This document shows positions 57,301 to 64,000 of a stretch of DNA of 64,000 nt, one piece after another. A program made the position numbers and the translations under genes. This DNA comes from Guillardia theta CCMP2712 (lineage: Eukaryota; Protista; Cryptophyta). The DNA lies in contig NW_005434614.1 of assembly GCF_000315625.1 (NCBI RefSeq), positions 440,820-504,819 of the forward strand. Reading direction: 5' to 3'. The notes below the pieces were generated by a model. The model was not told the origin of the DNA and ran no database searches. It saw only the letters and a program-made list of their open reading frames with translations. Position 1 is the first letter of the stretch; each line of letters opens with the position of its first letter.

Positions 57301-58554
57301 AGTTCAATACCAAAATTGGTGAAAAGTAAGAACAAATTAGGAACACAGATGGCTAAAGATTGCTTCATAAGATCAAGAACAAGATTCTGCGATTGCAGTC
57401 TTGCTTAAACAAACTTGTTACATCTCGAAGATTCGCTGACTTCAGGTTGTACTTGAGGAGATCCAAAACAGAGACATATGCACAGTTCAATCCAAACAGA
57501 CACCTCATATGAGCTCAAAACAAAAAGATATCCCCAACCTGGCTTTCGTCTCCAAAGGACTGTAAATCTTGTGCGGCGATTGGGGCATGAGCAGCCATTT
57601 CAATTCATCAGCACCGCTGAAATGGAATTCTGCAACCATATCAAACGGTGCTAGAAAGAAAGGTAGCAAGTGTGATGTTGACTCAAGAAATCTAAATTCC
57701 TCGCAAAATTTGATAGGGAGGAAAACAATTGCTAATGCCTTTCAAGCATTTACAATCTCATCCTGTTTGGATAGAGTACGATAAATTCTAGTTCTGCAAG
57801 CATCTTTACAGCTGTTTTGACCTCTTGGCCTTAGTTTCAACCGCCCAAAGAGGTTCCCTGTCAAAAAAATTCTCTCATTGAAACTCTACATGATCATTTG
57901 ATATTTGAGAAGTATTCTTTAGTAAAAATGTTTTGGACATTCAAACCAAGAACGGGAAAGTCACTCTTGCAACTCAAGGAGCGGTGGTTCCGTATGCATG
58001 TGTTTGATTCACTGCCTTATTCTATTCATGATTGTCATTTCTCTTGTATTCCTTGCTCTCTTTCCTCCTCTCACATGTTTCGTATTTCCCCCACATTCCC
58101 CGTGCACCCTTTCTCTCGATTCCACCCACCCCTTGAAAAACTCTACCCCCTTCATGAAGGTCTTAGAGTGGGTCATGCCCCCCTTTTAGGGCTGGTGCAA
58201 CGAAATGAGGGCAGGGTGGGTATCCGGCAGCCCAGAAAATTCTCTATTCACAATGTTTTGTTAAATCGAGGTGGTATTGGGTAAAATATCACTTAATTAG
58301 AACCCCTCCAAATCCTTCTGCCCGTTTCAAAAAAAAAAAGGCCGAATTAGATCTGGTTCTAATTAGCTCTCTGAGAACGGCCTGAGGACAAAATCAGGAG
58401 AGTCGAGGAGGCTTGACCCTGACACTGTCGCACTGGCCAAACGGCGAGAAGAGAAAAGACAGCGAGAACCAAACCCAATCCTGCCGACTACTGTCTCCCC
58501 GGCATACCGGCGAGCTTGACTGCTGACTCACTGACGGCGGTCAGGGCGTTTAGG

Positions 58555-58640
58555 AGCCCGGCGGCCGGCCCTTACTAAGAGCATGCTGACCTACGGCGCG
58601 TAGGTAGAGCGCAAGGGGACCGGAGAAGGCTGCGAGCAAG
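58555..58640 (+). mobile_element. Telomeric element copy A: left-end fragment only, preceded by degenerate AGGGCGTTTAGG
   Basis: Clear homology to 59043-59120 (GCCGGCCCTTAnTAAGAGCATGCTG..GAGCGCAAGGGGAC..GCTGCGAGCAAG). Confidence 0.75.
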
Positions 58641-58655
58641 TTCTTGGTCTCCTTC

Positions 58656-59023
58656 AACGCACTCTGCATACTCAGTCCTTCAACGCACCGTCGGCACTCT
58701 GCATACTCCTACAACGCGCTCTGCATACTCCTACAACGCACTGCCACTGCATACTCCTACAACGCACTGCCACTGCATACTCCTACAACGCACTCTGCAT
58801 ACTCCTACAACGCACTGCCACTGCATACTCCTACAACGCACTGCCACTGCATACTCAGGCTCCTACCGTACAACGCACTCTGCATACTCCTACAACGCAC
58901 TCTGCATATTCCTACAACGCACTCTGGCATACTCCTACAACGCACTCTGGCATACTCCTACAATGCACTCTGCATACTCCTACAGCGCACTCTGGCATAC
59001 TCCTACAACGCACTCTGGCATAC
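58656..59023. repeat. 22-26-bp minisatellite (GCATACTCCTACAACGCACTCT), ~16 units
   Basis: Visible tandem units with 22, 23 and 26 nt variants. Confidence 0.93.
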
Positions 59024-59042
59024 TTAGGGTTTAGGGTTTAGG
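59024..59042 (+). repeat. Interstitial telomeric repeat (TTTAGGG, ~2.7 units)
   Basis: TTAGGGTTTAGGGTTTAGG. Confidence 0.9.
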
Positions 59043-59616
59043 AGCCGGCCCTTAGTAAGAGCATGCTGCCCTGCGGCGCGTAGGGAGAGCGCAAGGGGAC
59101 TGGTGGAAGCTGCGAGCAAGAGGTTCGTATAGTTCTAACAGCTTTCTAAGCATGGTACTACAGTATGATGAGAGCGTTCGAAACCTGCTGTATCGGCGAT
59201 CATGCCAATACACTCAGGGTGAGCGCTCTGGAGGCCACGTCGAGGAGGCCGCCGACCTCGTCGAGAGGGTGAAGAACTTCACCAAGCGTTATCCGAATAG
59301 TCGGACAGCTTATGCTCCCGACGCTATCGCTGAAGCCATCCGCTCGACATGTCGGCAGGCGAGACGCGACCTGTTTGAAGACTCTCTGAGCGAATGGAGC
59401 TCAGAGTCGAGAGCATGGTTTATTCAACAGATGGAGGAGGCCAAGAAGCAGAATGTCGAGACATGGCATCGGCACCCAAGGCACCGAGGGGACCTCCTTC
59501 ATCTCCATGACTCTCCTAGGGATTTCCTCGATGTTTGTTCGACAAGAAGAAAAGTTGAAATCGAAGCTTATGGAGCTAGGTCTCATGGTAGACTCAGTCG
59601 ATGGAGTCGACAAGGC
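59043..59616 (+). mobile_element. Telomeric element copy B: diverged, frameshifted and right-truncated
   Basis: Encodes MVLQYDESVRNLLYRRSCQYTQ.. homologous to copies C and D; breaks off at ..GLMVDSVDGVDKA directly into TTTAGGG. Confidence 0.85.
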
Positions 59617-59644
59617 TTTAGGGTTTAGGGTTTAGGGTTTAGGG
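59617..59644 (+). repeat. (TTTAGGG)4
   Basis: Four perfect units. Confidence 0.95.
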
Positions 59645-59759
59645 GCAGCATGGCTCCTTGTCAGGGCAGCATGGCTCCTTGTCAGGTGTAGGGGAAGCCG
59701 CCAGGGCGCCAAGGAAGCTGCAAGCGAGAGGTTTGTATACTTCAAATAGCGTTCTAAGT

Positions 59760-61905
59760 ATGGTTCTTCAGTATGATGAAAATGTTCGCAACCTGCTGTA
59801 TCGGAGATCATGCCAATACACGCAGAGCGGACTTGTGGATGCCTCTGTCCTCGAAGCTGATCTTGTCGAGAAAGTGAAGAGCTTCGCGAAGCGTTATCCG
59901 AACAGCAGGACAGCCCAGGCTTGCAAGGCTGTGGAGGGATGCACCCCCGACGCTATCGCAGAAGCCATCCGCTCGACATGTCAGCAGGCACGACGTGAGC
60001 TTCTACAAGAAGCAATGACTGGATGGAGTGACGCATCCAGAGAGTGGTTTATGCAGCAGATTGAAGAAGCCAAGAAGGAGAAGGTCGAGACATACACCGC
60101 CACAGCAGGCAACGAGGTGACTTCCTTCATCTCAGTCCATGACTCTCCTGGGCATCTCCTCGGTGTATGTCAACCACGAAGAGAAGTTGAAGAAGAAATT
60201 TGAAGAGATCGGACTGATCGTAGACTCAGTGCAAGAGAGTAAAGCAATCATGTGGAAGGCTTTGTATAGACCCGAGATAGCGAGTGCTGAGGAGATCCCG
60301 GTGACTGTTTCCTTCCTTCGCAATGCACAAGCGGAGAAGCTCTGGCAGGGAAGAGAGGACTTCGCGATCGATGGTCGCAAGTTCACAGCTGTACATGTGA
60401 GCATCGTGCACGATCGATCTTTCAAGATTCGAGCCAAGAGAGGACCCTGGGGCAAAGGGGGCAGCTTGGCAGAGCTGACCCACCTGCTAACCTTGGGCGG
60501 CATGACAACAGCTGAGATAGCTGCCGTCTATCGCTATCAGCTGCTGCGCCAGTCCCTTGCAGCGGTCCAACTCCAGCCGCTGGCAGGCATGCTGGTCGCT
60601 GGGGCGCCAGGCCAGCAAGTCCACAAAGGCTTAGGTCAGAAAGGCTTCGTCGCTGTAGGGGCCAACGTCATCTGGAGACAGAGGGAGGTGGAGTGGATCG
60701 TCTCCTCGAGCTGCCCAGAGGCGAATGATACAGCATTTCGAGCTTTCCGAGAGAGCGAAGCGATGGAGGGAGTACACCTGACTCTGTTCAGCGAGGACCC
60801 GAAGATCAGAGAGGCGCTCGCAGTCGAGTTGACAGCTGATCGCTTTGTCTCTAGGAATAAGTTGAAGAAGGCATCAAGACTGCAGAAGAAGGCAGGCGGC
60901 AAGGACGGCAAGGAGATCAAGATCATCATCAAGTCGACGGCGGCATCTGGTCGCTTCACGAGGAAGGAGATGGAGGGGCTGTGCAACGGCGGCAACACGT
61001 CCATCGCAAGAGTCAAGAGAGTCCTGTTGGAGATCGCTAACAGGCTCGAGATCAAAGTTGAAGGCATCGACATGGAGGAGGATTTGAACACCAAGTCCTG
61101 GAACGGGTCCAAGCTATGCATCCTCCTCGGCTCCACGGAGGATGCTCGACGCATGATGAAGGAGCTGCCCTTCTATCTCGAAGGCGCAGCAACCAAGCTC
61201 GAAGCAGTCGGCTTCGACAAGGAGCCTGAGGCGGCTGGTCAGCGGGGCACCAGCGACACAGCGCAGCGACAGGAGGAGAGCGAGGGAGAGTGGCTGGAGT
61301 TTACAGACCTGGAGAGGATCACAATGGAGGCAGCATCTCCGTCAAGCCAAGAGGACATGCAGCTCGTCAGCGAGCTGTCAGCAGTCATCGAAGATGCAAC
61401 TTCTTTGAACGAGGCGGGGACGAGCGAGCCGATCAAGCTGGTCCTGGACAAGGCCGTTGGCAACCTCCACGACACCTTCTACTCTCCGGGGAGCCTGGAG
61501 TTCATGTCGCTGGGAGAGTGGGCGAAGACGCCAGAGGAGCAGGGAGTGGGACGCAACGCGCTCAAGGAGAAGCTGGGGAAGTGGCTGCAGAGCAAGCGCT
61601 GGACTCGCGTGCAAGGAGAGAGCAAGAAGGCAAGGAGGGGCAGCGCGTTCTCGCCACGGGCAACGGCAGCTGCTGAGCTTGAGCAGGAGGCGGAGAGCGA
61701 CGACATAGAGCGTCGATCTCTTAGCTTCCTGTTCATAGCACTGAGTAAATTCGCAGAGATGCATGTGCTGGCCTGCTCGCTGAAGGTGGACAAGAAGGAC
61801 CGACTGCGGGTGGAGATGAGGGAAGATGGCGAAGAAGAGGAAGACATGGAGGAAGAGCAAGGCGAGGGCGAGGAAGAAGACGGGGCGAGCCCGTACCGAG
61901 CTTGA
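59760..61905 (+). pseudogene. Element ORF (713 aa if repaired), disrupted by a 4-nt insertion near 60133; ORF1/gag-like, no RT
   Basis: Copy C reads ATCTCAGTCCATG where copy D reads ATCTCCATG. Removing 4 nt fuses the 59658 and 60139 ORFs. Confidence 0.8.
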
Positions 61906-61930
61906 GCTGAGCTCAAGGTAAGTAGAGAAG

Positions 61931-62144
61931 GTAGGAGGCGACCGAAGGCCAAGGTGAGGAGAGGCAACTCTCCTGACTGAGGCTGAGGAAGCTGAATGGA
62001 GGAGGAGTAGGTGGCGACCGAAGGCCAAGGTGAGGAGAGGCAACTCTTCTGACTGAGGCTGAGGAAACTGAATGGAGGAGGAGTAGGTGGCGACCGAAGG
62101 CCAAGGTGAGGAGAGGCAACTCTCCTGACTGAGGCTGAGGAAGC
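61931..62144. repeat. 76-bp tandem repeat, ~2.8 copies, in the element's 3' non-coding region
   Basis: Units start at 61931, 62007 and 62083. Confidence 0.93.
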
Positions 62145-62325
62145 CAAGAGAAGACAGCAGAAGTAGAGAGTAGAAAGACGCCTCAGAAGCAGGGTTCGCA
62201 TTGTAGGCCGTGTACTCCCAGTGCTCGAGCGCCTCTTTAGACTAGGATCAAACTGCAAAAGCCCACAACGAGGCCGAGCAACATTCTAGCATTCTAATAA
62301 ACTCACATAATAAAAATAATAATAA

Positions 62326-62398
62326 TAGGGTTTAGGGTTTAGGGTTTAGGGTTTAGGGTTTAGGGTTTAGGGTTTAGGGTTTAGGGTTTAGGGTTTAG
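62326..62398 (+). repeat. Telomeric tract TAGGG(TTTAGGG)9TTTAG
   Basis: Perfect Arabidopsis-type repeats with the G-rich strand on +. Confidence 0.97.
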
Positions 62399-63082
62399 AG
62401 CGCCGGTTATTTCAGGCAGCGCCGGTTATTTCAGGCAGCGCCGGTTATTTCAGGCAGCGCCGGTTATTTCAGGCAGCGCCGGTTATTTCAGGCAGCGCCG
62501 GTTATTTCAGGCAGCGCCGGTTATTTCAGGCAGCGCCGGTTATTTCAGGCAGCGCCGGTTATTTCAGGCAGCGCCGGTTATTTCAGGCAGCGCCGGTTAT
62601 TTCAGGCAGCGCCGGTTATTTCAGGCAGCGCCGGTTATTTCAGGCAGCGCCGGTTATTTCAGGCAGCGCCGGTTATTTCAGGCAGCGCCGGTTATTTCAG
62701 GCAGCGCCGGTTATTTCAGGCAGCGCCGGTTATTTCAGGCAGCGCCGGTTATTTCAGGCAGCGCCGGTTATTTCAGGCAGCGCCGGTTATTTCAGGCAGC
62801 GCCGGTTATTTCAGGCAGCGCCGGTTATTTCAGGCAGCGCCGGTTATTTCAGGCAGCGCCGGTTATTTCAGGCAGCGCCGGTTATTTCAGGCAGCGCCGG
62901 TTATTTCAGGCAGCGCCGGTTATTTCAGGCAGCGCCGGTTATTTCAGGCAGCGCCGGTTATTTCAGGCAGCGCCGGTTATTTCAGGCAGCGCCGGTTATT
63001 TCAGGCAGCGCCGGTTATTTCAGGCAGCGCCGGTTATTTCAGGCAGCGCCGGTTATTTCAGGCAGCGCCGGTTATTTCAGGC
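62399..63082. repeat. 19-bp minisatellite (AGCGCCGGTTATTTCAGGC), 36 copies
   Basis: 684 bp = 36 x 19; no variant units seen. Confidence 0.97.
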
Positions 63083-63174
63083 ACCATGGCTGCACGCGTG
63101 GTGTAGGGGAAGCTGCCAGGGCGCCAAGGAAGCTGCAAGCGAGAGGTTTGTATACTTCAAATAGCTTTCTAAGT

Positions 63175-64000
63175 ATGGTTCTTCAGTATGATGAAAATGT
63201 TCGCAACCTGCTGTATCGGAGATCATGCCAATACACGCAGAGCGGACTTGTGGATGCCTCTGTCCTCGAAGCTGATCTCGTCGAGAGGGTGAAGAGCTTC
63301 GCGAAGCGTTATCCGAACAGCAGGACAGCCCAGGCTTGCAAGGCTGTGGAGGGATGCACCCCCGACGCTATCGCAGAAGCCATCCGCTCGACATGTCAGC
63401 AGGCACGACGTGAGCTTCTGCAAGAAGCGATGACTGGATGGAGTGACGCATCCAGAGAGTGGTTTATGCAGCAGATTGAAGAAGCCAAGAAGGAGAAGGT
63501 CGAGACATACACCGCCTCAGCAGGCAACGAGGTGACTTCCTTCATCTCCATGACTCTCCTGGGCATCTCCTCGGTGTATGTCAACCATGAAGAAAAGCTG
63601 AAGAAGAAATTTGAAGAGATCGGACTGATCGTAGACTCAGTGCAAGAGAGTAAAGCAATCATGTGGAAGGCTCCGTATAGACCCGAGATAGCGAGTGCTG
63701 ATGAGATCCCGGTGACTGTTTCTTTCCTCCGCAATGCACAAGCGGAGAAGCTCTGGCAGGGAAGAGAGGACTTCGCGATCGATGGTCGCAAGTTCACAGC
63801 TGTACATGTGAGCATCGTGCACGATCGATCTTTCAAGATTCGAGCCAAGAGAGGACCCTGGGGCAAAGGGGGCAGCTTGGCAGAGCTGACCCACCTGCTA
63901 ACCTTGGGCGGCATGACAACAGCAGAGATAGCTGCCGTCTATCGCTATCAGCTGCTGCGCCAGTCCCTTGCAGCGGTCCAACTCCAGCCGCTGGCAGGCA
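63175..64000 (+). CDS. Telomeric element copy D ORF, intact so far and running off the window
   Basis: Open from ATG 63175 to the window end; near-identical to copy C but without the frameshift. Confidence 0.85.
   Translation, partial: MVLQYDENVRNLLYRRSCQYTQSGLVDASVLEADLVERVKSFAKRYPNSRTAQACKAVEGCTPDAIAEAIRSTCQQARRELLQEAMTGWSDASREWFMQQIEEAKKEKVETYTASAGNEVTSFISMTLLGISSVYVNHEEKLKKKFEEIGLIVDSVQESKAIMWKAPYRPEIASADEIPVTVSFLRNAQAEKLWQGREDFAIDGRKFTAVHVSIVHDRSFKIRAKRGPWGKGGSLAELTHLLTLGGMTTAEIAAVYRYQLLRQSLAAVQLQPLAG

What the first reader, a model, noticed from the sequence alone, without database searches (positions are those of the whole stretch)
58543..64000. Head-to-tail telomeric array of a single-ORF, RT-less element punctuated by TTTAGGG (HeT-A/SART-like system in an alga)
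Seen: four co-oriented copies (A 58555, B 59043, C 59645, D ~63083) share their left ends. Each is preceded by TTTAGGG, degenerate before A. The complete copy C is ~2.7 kb with one intronless ORF in an intron-dense genome, and ends in AATAAA plus a (TAA)n tail fused to AGGG(TTTAGGG)n. No RT (YxDD), endonuclease, integrase or transposase motif is visible. The G-rich strand on + implies the chromosome end lies to the right. Known: Drosophila HeT-A is a gag-only telomeric retroelement, Bombyx SART inserts with its tail joined to AGG of TTAGG, and endonuclease-less Penelope-like Athena elements are primed by chromosome ends. Inference: this is a non-autonomous telomere-targeted retroelement mobilised in trans and co-existing with telomerase. 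I know of no description of it in this lineage but cannot check.
Basis: partly seen in the sequence, partly recalled or inferred. Interest (0 to 1): 0.9.

Follow-up and report, generated by a model that had tools for sequence, protein, structure and literature searches.

The report
Telomere-targeted ORF1-only retroelement array (Guillardia)
The end of this Guillardia theta contig is a head-to-tail array of a 2.7-kb retroelement that encodes only an RNA-binding-type protein, sits inside the telomere repeats, and most likely borrows the copying enzyme of larger related elements found at other chromosome ends, much like HeT-A/TART in flies or SART in the silkworm, but in a cryptophyte alga that also has a telomerase gene.

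Summary
The window ends at a contig end of Guillardia theta. Its last 5.4 kb hold four co-oriented copies of one element ("E1"), each preceded by telomere units.

E1 has at least 60 copies on about 40 contigs. About 56 of 58 placed copies lie within 35 kb of the contig end that their 3' tail points to. Most carry an intact 713-715 aa ORF (dN/dS 0.14).

E1 has no RT, but I found its likely partners. Two autonomous LINE families (A and B) occupy the same niche with the same polarity. Each has an ORF1 of about 715 aa and an ORF2 of 2,500-2,575 aa with a C48 protease, APE endonuclease, RT and a CCHC/restriction-like motif set.

- E1's ORF is homologous to their ORF1 (29-34% identity, E 1e-82).
- E1 shares their terminal 3' blocks, a trinucleotide tail and the same junction to TAGGG.
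- The 3' tail faces the chromosome end. This fits a nick in the C-strand (SART-type insertion), not HeT-A-type priming on the terminal overhang.

Further support comes from eroded copies capped by telomere units, a 47-nt stub, a twin-priming-like 5' inversion, and an independent environmental contig with the same layout.

Mobility itself is inferred, not shown. Other first-stage notes of this scan flagged the same system on other pieces of this genome. I found no published description.

The parts
58549..58554 (+). Degenerate telomere unit at the boundary between unique DNA and the array
   Evidence: Read directly.
58555..58693 (+). Copy A: short 5' fragment of an older E1 subfamily (5' leader only)
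   Evidence: Shares the leader ending in ...GCTGCGAGCAAG with copy B. Same subfamily leader seen in L014, L020 and L022.
58694..59024 (+). 23-26 nt minisatellite (~13 units) between copy A and the next telomere units; origin unexplained
   Evidence: TRF.
59024..59042 (+). Telomere units (2.7)
59043..59616 (+). Copy B: older subfamily (~73% identity to C). ORF starts at 59152. The copy is cut on its distal (3') side within the ORF and capped by telomere units.
   Evidence: WIN 2105-2598.
59617..59644 (+). Telomere units (4)
59645..62325 (+). Copy C: full-length E1. It holds a 21-nt x2.1 leader (59645-59686) and an ORF (59761-61905) broken by a 4-nt insertion near 60134-60137. Its 3' UTR has a 76-nt x2.8 repeat (61931-62144) and AATAAA (62296-62301), and ends in a (TAA)-type tail (62307-62325).
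62326..62398 (+). Telomere units (10.4) joined in fixed phase to the tail of copy C
62399..63083 (+). 19-nt x36 perfect tandem array: the 5' monomer array of copy D
   Evidence: TRF. The same monomers occur in 0.5 to more than 36 units at the 5' end of other copies.
63084..64000 (+). Copy D: young E1 copy. Its ORF starts at 63175 and stays open for 275 codons up to the contig end.

Best explanation
E1 is an ORF1-only, non-autonomous derivative of a family of telomeric-repeat-specific non-LTR (LINE) retrotransposons of Guillardia theta.

Inferred mechanism:
1. An E1 copy is transcribed. Its 715-aa protein, predicted to contain RRM folds, probably coats its own RNA.
2. ORF2 protein of an autonomous relative recognises the shared 3' terminal module. 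LINE-B has the same (TAA)n tail as E1. LINE-A has a (TAC)n tail.
3. That protein nicks the C-rich strand of the telomere duplex within CCC/TA/AA and reverse-transcribes the RNA from that 3'-OH.
4. The 5' end is then joined to the G-strand, usually at ...TTTAG(G), through AG/AGG microhomology.

Each insertion therefore lies sense-strand-on-G-strand with its tail pointing to the chromosome end. Telomerase keeps adding units distally, terminal erosion trims the outermost copy, and new insertions land in the new tract. This builds a head-to-tail array in which the oldest copies are proximal.

Shown here: structure, distribution, polarity, junctions, homologies and selection. Inferred: RNA intermediate, supply of ORF2 in trans, the nick site, and which partner serves E1.
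For: Distribution:
- At least 65 DNA hits at 96-98% identity. Minus-strand copies lie at contig starts and plus-strand copies at contig ends.
- Contigs C113 and C37 end in telomere tracts directly distal to an E1 tail.

Retroelement hallmarks:
- About 30 copies end ...AATAAACTCACA(TAA)3-9 joined to TAGGG plus telomere units. Tract length and the neighbouring element vary.
- The number of 5' monomers varies, and 5' joints show microhomology.
- A 47-nt 3'-terminal stub is flanked by telomere units on both sides.

ORF and partners:
- 22 intact ORFs have dN/dS 0.14, and 0.15-0.20 against the old subfamily.
- The E1 ORF matches LINE-A ORF1 at 29% over 680 aa (E 8e-83), and the MLRN/LINE-B ORF1 at 34% and 30%.
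- LINE-A is ORF1 716 aa plus ORF2 2,503 aa, with APE at 37.5 bits and RVT_1 at 122 bits. The APE catalytic motifs are kept. The RT matches R2 and L1 ORF2p structures.
- At least 4 copies have an open ORF2 of about 2,500 aa.

Shared 3' ends:
- Conserved blocks are shared among E1, E2 and LINE-A.
- E1's last ~32 nt are 94% identical to LINE-B-type ends in G. theta and 91% identical on the environmental contig.
- E2's last 140 nt are 75% identical to LINE-A.

Other support:
- One LINE-A copy has a 264-bp 5' inversion with a 15-bp overlap, a twin-priming signature.
- Eroded copies capped by telomere units occur in the window (copy B) and in at least 5 other loci.
- A telomerase RBD hit is present.
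- MMETSP transcripts of G. theta and Hanusia phi encode family members.
- An independent environmental contig carries E1 tail, telomere units, LINE-B and telomere units in that order.
- SART1 is documented to insert into telomere repeats rather than at the end, and to mobilise 3'UTR-carrying RNA in trans (PMC7265360).
Against: - No direct evidence of an RNA intermediate or of new insertions.
- No run holding the element is on record as RNA; the run kinds are only guessed.
- High identity among copies and tandem arrays could partly reflect recombination or gene conversion between chromosome ends.
- The sequence shared with the autonomous elements is short for E1 (about 20-40 nt plus the tail).
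- The partner (A or B, or an unseen closer relative) is not resolved.
- Two E1 copies (C72:438479 inverted, C46:485118) and a few E2 and LINE copies are not terminal.
- The assembly is old, and its arrays were not checked against long reads.
Confidence: 0.8

Rival explanations
1. E1 is a subtelomeric gene family of the yeast Y' type. It descends from a retroelement but now spreads and homogenises among chromosome ends only by recombination, break-induced replication or gene conversion. Its protein is kept by host-level selection.
For: Tandem head-to-tail arrays with short interstitial telomere tracts also describe yeast Y' (my knowledge). Copies are very similar (dS 0.026) and under purifying selection. 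Some junctions recur within one array or in overlapping loci.
Against: - Tail length varies from 3 to 9 TAA units, and tract lengths, monomer numbers and neighbours vary between copies.
- A 47-nt tail-only stub is flanked by telomere units.
- The junction phase to TAGGG is the same for E1, E2, LINE-A and LINE-B despite unrelated bodies.
- Potentially active autonomous relatives with an open 2,500-aa ORF2 are present.

Recombination probably also acts, but it does not explain these features.
Confidence: 0.1
2. E1 is added to the very end of the chromosome by priming on the terminal 3' overhang (HeT-A/TART or Athena mode), without endonuclease.
For: Telomeric location.
Against: - The sense strand is the G-strand and the tail is distal. 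Overhang priming would put the tail on the centromere side.
- The autonomous relatives keep an APE endonuclease with all catalytic motifs.
- The junction is in a fixed phase inside the repeat.
Confidence: 0.03
3. The array is an assembly artefact: collapsed or chimeric joining of repeats at contig ends.
For: The assembly is fragmented (669 contigs) and repeats cluster at contig ends.
Against: - The same architecture appears on about 40 contigs with different junction details.
- It also appears on an independently assembled environmental contig from a related organism (84-92% identity).
- Runs from 11 studies hold more than half of the element's sampled words.
Confidence: 0.03

Closest known systems
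HeT-A with TART/TAHRE (Drosophila telomeric LINEs)
   Same: A gag/ORF1-only element is far more abundant than its RT-encoding relatives. Its ORF is homologous to the partner's ORF1. Both form head-to-tail terminal arrays (PMC5537684 abstract; here).
   Different: The orientation is opposite: here the tail is distal. Telomerase-type repeats lie between the copies and a TERT RBD hit is present. The ORF1 has predicted RRM folds rather than gag zinc knuckles. The partner carries an intact endonuclease. The lineage is unrelated.
SART1/TRAS1 (Bombyx mori, R1-clade telomeric-repeat-specific LINEs)
   Same: Insertion is into the telomere repeat duplex at a fixed position and orientation by an APE-type LINE, with the sense strand on the G-strand as in SART. 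The 3' UTR is recognised and RNA can be mobilised in trans. The elements co-exist with telomere repeats (PMC7265360; here).
   Different: - The tail is a trinucleotide repeat, (TAA)n or (TAC)n, not poly(A).
- ORF2 is twice as long and has a C48 protease and a C-terminal CCHC/restriction-like motif set.
- A dedicated ORF1-only family exists.
- The 5' end carries monomer arrays.
- Clade membership was not tested.
Dualen/RandI LINE clade (Chlamydomonas)
   Same: The autonomous partners combine an APE endonuclease, RT, a cysteine protease and what looks like a restriction-like endonuclease motif set. PMC9977147 states that APE and RLE are uniquely present together in Dualen.
   Different: The RLE is seen only as motifs. 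RNase H was not detected. To my knowledge Dualens have a single ORF and no telomere specificity. No RT phylogeny was done.
MoTeR1/MoTeR2 (Magnaporthe oryzae) and Zepp (Chlorella vulgaris)
   Same: These are retroelements embedded in or accumulating at telomeres of an organism with telomerase. MoTeR2 is a non-autonomous partner that shares its ends with MoTeR1. Both systems are listed in PMC10088271.
   Different: MoTeRs use a restriction-like endonuclease only, and MoTeR2 does not encode an ORF1-like protein (my knowledge). Zepp was not compared because no sequence was at hand.

Membership tests
Non-autonomous non-LTR (LINE-derived) retroelement | No LTR or TIR; the 3' end is a simple-repeat tail of variable length after a polyadenylation-type signal | tested here: met
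   AATAAA followed by (TAA)3-9 in about 30 copies.
Non-autonomous non-LTR (LINE-derived) retroelement | Shares its 3' terminal module with an autonomous LINE of the same genome | tested here: met
   Conserved blocks and junction are shared with LINE-A and E2. The last ~32 nt are 94% identical to LINE-B-type ends and 91% identical on L083. The shared stretch is short.
Non-autonomous non-LTR (LINE-derived) retroelement | Lacks RT and endonuclease; the ORF is homologous to a LINE ORF1 | tested here: met
   No Pfam domain in the ORF. 29-34% identity to the ORF1 of LINE-A and LINE-B. No ORF2 remnant in the 3' UTR.
Non-autonomous non-LTR (LINE-derived) retroelement | Copies truncated at the 5' end that keep the 3' end | tested here: met
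   A 47-nt stub (L006 1424-1470) and a 740-nt copy (L003 558-1295). Few cases in the sample.
Non-autonomous non-LTR (LINE-derived) retroelement | Moves through an RNA copy made by a partner's RT | not testable with these tools
Only transcriptome-derived family members are known.
Telomeric-repeat-specific LINE (SART/TRAS type) | Fixed orientation and fixed insertion phase within the telomere repeat | tested here: met
   All tails are joined to TAGGG on the G-strand. Polarity holds at about 56 of 58 placed copies.
Telomeric-repeat-specific LINE (SART/TRAS type) | Autonomous member encodes an APE-type endonuclease with catalytic residues | tested here: met
   Exo_endo_phos at 37.5 bits, above the cut-off. 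Motifs NVNG, LQE, GDFN, KLD and VDH are conserved in A and B.
Telomeric-repeat-specific LINE (SART/TRAS type) | RT groups in the R1 clade | not tested
   No reference set at hand. The domain architecture argues against it.
HeT-A/TART/TAHRE | Tail faces the centromere; elements are added to the terminus in place of telomerase repeats | tested here: not met
   The tail is distal, telomere units lie between copies, and a TERT RBD hit is present.
HeT-A/TART/TAHRE | Gag-only element paired with an autonomous element that has a related gag | tested here: met
   This is functional resemblance only.
Dualen/RandI clade (for the autonomous partners) | Both an APE and a restriction-like endonuclease in one ORF | tested here: inconclusive
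   The APE is clear. The C-terminus has Cx2Cx8Hx4C, PD, E and K..KY motifs conserved in A and B. There is no profile or PDB match and no structure model.
Dualen/RandI clade (for the autonomous partners) | Cysteine protease domain | tested here: met
   Peptidase_C48 at 40.5 bits in the LINE-B-type ORF2, and 17.8 bits, below the cut-off, in LINE-A.
Penelope-like Athena / Terminon | Penelope-type RT without endonuclease, primed by the chromosome end | tested here: not met
   The RT matches LINE R2 and L1 ORF2p. An APE is present. The orientation is opposite.

The most novel reading that the evidence does not exclude
Guillardia theta chromosome ends are hybrid telomeres. Telomerase repeats are interleaved with tens of kilobases of a dedicated community of elements: two dual-endonuclease (Dualen-like) LINE families with a novel multi-RRM ORF1, and at least two ORF1-only families. 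The ORF1-only families arose independently of Drosophila HeT-A and each match one autonomous family by their tail: E1 with LINE-B through (TAA)n, E2 with LINE-A through (TAC)n. This would be a convergent, undescribed gag-only/autonomous telomeric system in a protist with telomerase, possibly contributing to end buffering.
Probability: 0.5. Interest if true: 0.8.

Novelty: new variant of a known kind. Interest (0 to 1): 0.72.

Why it matters
Telomere-specialised retrotransposons are known from a handful of lineages: flies, silkworm and beetles, Giardia, Chlorella, rice blast fungus, rotifers and anole (PMC10088271). An abundant ORF1-only partner is, to my knowledge, best known from Drosophila (HeT-A).

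A second, independent case in a cryptophyte that keeps telomerase would show that the division of labour between a gag-only element and an autonomous one is a recurrent outcome of life in the telomere niche. It would not then be a consequence of telomerase loss.

The system also offers a natural test bed:
- Several sequence-distinct 3' modules and tails are matched to distinct partners.
- The 715-aa ORF1 family has no detectable relatives outside Guillardia and Hanusia.
- A LINE lineage combines protease, APE, RT and probably a second endonuclease with strict target specificity.

Practically, dozens of G. theta "hypothetical protein" gene models (GUITHDRAFT_*) are fragments of these elements.

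Tried and rejected
Reads and expression
There are therefore no read-level data, and this is no verdict on expression or on the assembly.
- One paper reading "find" listed the 7-letter unit among its terms. It was rejected for the syntax of another term and re-sent without the unit. Similar repeats in other loci were only read or handled in scripts.

Access to other contigs
Most other arrays, the LINE-B 3' ends in G. theta and the non-terminal copies could not be read.

The E1 protein
- Pfam, PDB sequence searches and the ESM Atlas found nothing.
- The first structure model, built on 8 sequences, was too poor to use (pLDDT 51).

Other dead ends
- The RNA consensus structure of the shared 3' end was not supported (3 sequences, -6 kcal/mol).
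- The word-indexed homologue search with APE+RT gave only 6 hits, so the clade could not be assigned.
- The C-terminal region of ORF2 had no PDB match.
- The ORF upstream of the C90 LINE-B copy is unrelated to ORF1. It looks like a fragment of an LTR-element pol.

Readings considered and rejected
- Athena/PLE and overhang priming (wrong orientation, APE present).
- An ordinary subtelomeric duplication (junctions vary).

Literature
- Searches for Guillardia combined with telomere, retrotransposon, non-LTR or subtelomere found no description. Repbase could not be checked.

Full report
**What is in the window**

- After unique DNA comes a degenerate telomere unit (58549-58554).
- Copy A follows: a short 5' fragment of the element from 58555, running into a 23-26 nt minisatellite (58694-59024).
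- Then 2.7 telomere units.
- Copy B (59043-59616) belongs to an older subfamily and is cut inside its ORF.
- Then 4 telomere units.
- Copy C (59645-62325) is full length.
- Then 10.4 telomere units (62326-62398).
- Then a perfect 19-nt x36 array (62399-63083).
- Copy D runs from 63084 to the end.

A two-unit telomere pattern occurs 14 times, all on the + strand, against 0.02 expected. The window is G000:C60:440820-504819 and contig C60 is 504,819 bp long. The array therefore abuts a contig end, with the G-rich strand running 5'->3' toward it.

One correction: copy C's ORF is split by a 4-nt insertion near 60134-60137 relative to copy D and other copies.

**Organism and copy number**

Protein homologues carry GUITHDRAFT names, so the genome is Guillardia theta CCMP2712, a cryptophyte.

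Copy C finds at least 65 DNA matches at 96-98% identity, and a protein search adds more. In all, about 60 copies lie on about 40 contigs.

With contig lengths, the polarity is striking.
- Every minus-strand copy but one lies within 25 kb of a contig start.
- Every plus-strand copy but one lies within 35 kb of a contig end.
- The exceptions are C72:438479 (inverted) and C46:485118.

Telomere runs in the fetched loci are always on the strand that matches the element's orientation, apart from one short inverted tract in L024. Contigs C113 and C37 end in telomere tracts directly distal to an element's tail. On C15 the terminal array is at least 34 kb long.

**Anatomy of the element (E1)**

Twenty-two of the copies I could read carry an intact ORF of 713-715 aa.

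*3' end.* It is nearly invariant: AATAAA, then CTCACA, then (TAA)3-9, then TAGGG and telomere units. The number of TAA units, the length of the telomere tract (1.5 to more than 20 units) and the next neighbour all vary. Neighbours seen include another E1, LINE-A, LINE-B and an older subfamily.

*5' end.* It is a variable array of 0.5 to more than 36 monomers of 19-20 nt, in two variants. Older subfamilies carry other monomers. The 5' end is joined to the upstream telomere units mostly at ...TTTAG or ...TTTAGG, overlapping the AG/AGG that starts the monomer.

These varying junctions exclude simple segmental duplication.

*Truncated copies.*
- Several copies are cut on their distal side and capped by telomere units: window copy B, L006 4204, L010 199, L014 4431, L027 813 and L009. 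This is the expected trace of terminal erosion followed by telomerase healing.
- One copy is a 47-nt 3'-terminal stub flanked by telomere units on both sides. This is the expected trace of abortive reverse transcription.

In the window, the two proximal copies are old and truncated, and the two distal ones are young.

**The missing RT**

The E1 ORF has no Pfam domain. An ORF distal to an E1 copy on C65, however, has an RT (RVT_1, 125 bits).

Searching the genome with it gave 75 matches. They fall into two families, again at contig ends with the same polarity:
- family A, 98-99% identical to the query, with open frames up to 2,504 aa;
- family B, 57-58% identical.

A full LINE-A on C15 reads in this order:
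- telomere units;
- a 20-nt monomer array;
- ORF1 of 716 aa;
- ORF2 of 2,503 aa;
- a 3' UTR ending in AATAAA, a short spacer, (TAC)n, TAGGG and 14 telomere units.

ORF2 of LINE-A carries the following:
- an APE endonuclease above Pfam's cut-off (37.5 bits), with motifs NVNG, LQE, GDFN, KLD and VDH conserved between A and B;
- an RT that matches the R2 and human L1 ORF2p structures;
- a weak zf-RVT hit;
- a C-terminus with Cx2Cx8Hx4C, PD, E and K..KY motifs that resemble the restriction-like endonuclease of R2-type elements. There is no profile or PDB support for this.

An N-terminal Ulp1/C48 protease is marginal in A but clear in a B-type element (40.5 bits). APE plus RLE is described as unique to the Dualen clade (PMC9977147). 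I rate Dualen membership as inconclusive.

**Link between E1 and the LINEs**

*ORF homology.* The E1 ORF is homologous to LINE ORF1:
- 29% identity over 680 aa to LINE-A ORF1 (E 8e-83);
- 34% to the "MLRN" ORF that lies distal to E1 in four loci.

*An environmental contig.* A 10.7-kb contig (L083) shows that the MLRN type is the ORF1 of LINE-B. Its ORF1 (713 aa) is 92% identical to the G. theta MLRN ORF. It is followed directly by a 2,575-aa ORF2 that is 82% identical to G. theta LINE-B.

That contig begins with an E1-like 3' end (84% identity) and telomere units. It ends in AAATAAACTCAAA(TAA)3, TAGGG and telomere units. It is thus an independent assembly, from a related organism, of the same architecture.

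*A second ORF1-only family.* E2 is 61% identical to E1 at the protein level and has about 20 copies, also terminal.

*Shared 3' ends.*
- E2's last 140 nt are 75% identical to the LINE-A 3' end, and it shares the (TAC)n tail.
- E1 shares with both the blocks TTAGACTAG and CTAGCATTCTAATAAA.
- E1 shares its last ~32 nt (94%) and its (TAA)n tail with LINE-B-type ends.

I therefore propose the pairings E1 with LINE-B and E2 with LINE-A. This is an inference.

**Selection, expression and fold**

Pairwise dN/dS among the 22 intact E1 ORFs is 0.14 (dS 0.026). Against two old-subfamily copies it is 0.15-0.20. The protein has evidently mattered for propagation.

The ORF1 family is tiny. Only 56 representatives were found among 1.84 billion proteins, and all the named ones come from G. 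theta or Hanusia phi. Members occur in MMETSP transcriptomes of both species.

Several small runs of the organism, guessed to be RNA, hold more than half of the ORF's sampled words. None is on record as RNA.

An AlphaFold model built on 24 sequences (pLDDT 68.6) hits multi-RRM proteins in Foldseek (Prp24 and UP1, E 3e-5). Residues 384-485 align to canonical RRMs at Z 7.9, rmsd 2.5 A, over 77 of 80 residues. This is a moderate match. It fits an RNA-binding ORF1p.

**Mechanism**

The sense strand is the G-strand and the tail is distal. First-strand cDNA must therefore be primed by a 3'-OH of the C-rich strand lying distal to the insertion, which means an internal nick. The chromosome's own 3' overhang would give the opposite orientation, as in HeT-A and TART.

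Three further points fit endonuclease-dependent, target-primed reverse transcription into the repeat duplex, as shown for SART1 (PMC7265360):
- the intact APE domain;
- the fixed junction phase, whose nick site is ambiguous within TT/T/A/GGG because both tails end in TA;
- a LINE-A copy with a 264-bp 5' inversion and a 15-bp overlap, a twin-priming signature.

A telomerase RBD hit (51 bits) and the capped truncations indicate that telomerase works alongside.

**What remains open**

- No RNA ends, no strand information and no de novo insertion.
- The partner assignment.
- Whether the second endonuclease is real.
- The LINE clade.
- The non-terminal copies.
- The minisatellite after copy A.
- Whether the 5' monomers are promoters or products of reiterated copying.

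**Prior knowledge**

The held literature gave no description for Guillardia or other cryptophytes. Repbase could not be consulted.

Other first-stage notes of this scan describe the same system on other pieces of this genome. They are unchecked AI notes and I do not count them as independent support.

Noticed in passing
window 58694-59024: A 23-26 nt minisatellite (~13 units) follows the truncated copy A and precedes telomere units. It resembles none of the 5' monomer types I saw. It may be the leader array of yet another element, or filler.
   Followed up: no
L023:4186-4450 (G000:C65:472168-472440): A 5'-truncated LINE-A copy starts with a 264-bp inverted segment that overlaps the forward part by 15 bp. 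This is a classic twin-priming-like 5' inversion, directly after 8 telomere units.
   Followed up: yes
G000:C72:438479-441137 (-), C46:484430-487700 (+), C176:15718-16731 (+), C50:473786-475264 (-): A few copies of E1, E2 and LINE-A lie far from a contig end or point the wrong way. They may mark old end fusions, inversions, very long arrays or scaffolding errors.
   Followed up: no
L024:1473-1486 (G000:C113, 5' side of an E1 copy): The 5' end of one E1 copy is joined to a short C-strand (inverted) telomere tract instead of a G-strand one.
   Followed up: no
L014/L016 (G000:C134, about 174.6 kb): An E1 copy lacks its last ~30 nt and tail. It is fused through an AGC microhomology directly to the 19-nt monomer array of the next copy, with no telomere units between. 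This looks like a template switch between two RNAs, or a deletion.
   Followed up: partly
L060:6285-9746 (-) (G000:C90): The 1,154-codon open frame upstream of a LINE-B copy is unrelated to ORF1. It looks like part of an LTR-retrotransposon pol, and the stretch also holds N runs.
   Followed up: partly
Runs X1, X4-X9, X12, X15: Lake-water, freshwater and aquatic metagenomes from several studies hold about 60% of the element's sampled words, although G. theta is, to my knowledge, a marine culture strain. Possible explanations are a spike-in, feed organism, contamination or close freshwater relatives.
   Followed up: no
Gene models GUITHDRAFT_*: Dozens of annotated 'hypothetical proteins' of G. 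theta (182-746 aa) are whole or partial ORF1s of these elements. One model (P0040) fuses an N-terminal ORF1 fragment to an EGF-domain protein.
   Followed up: no
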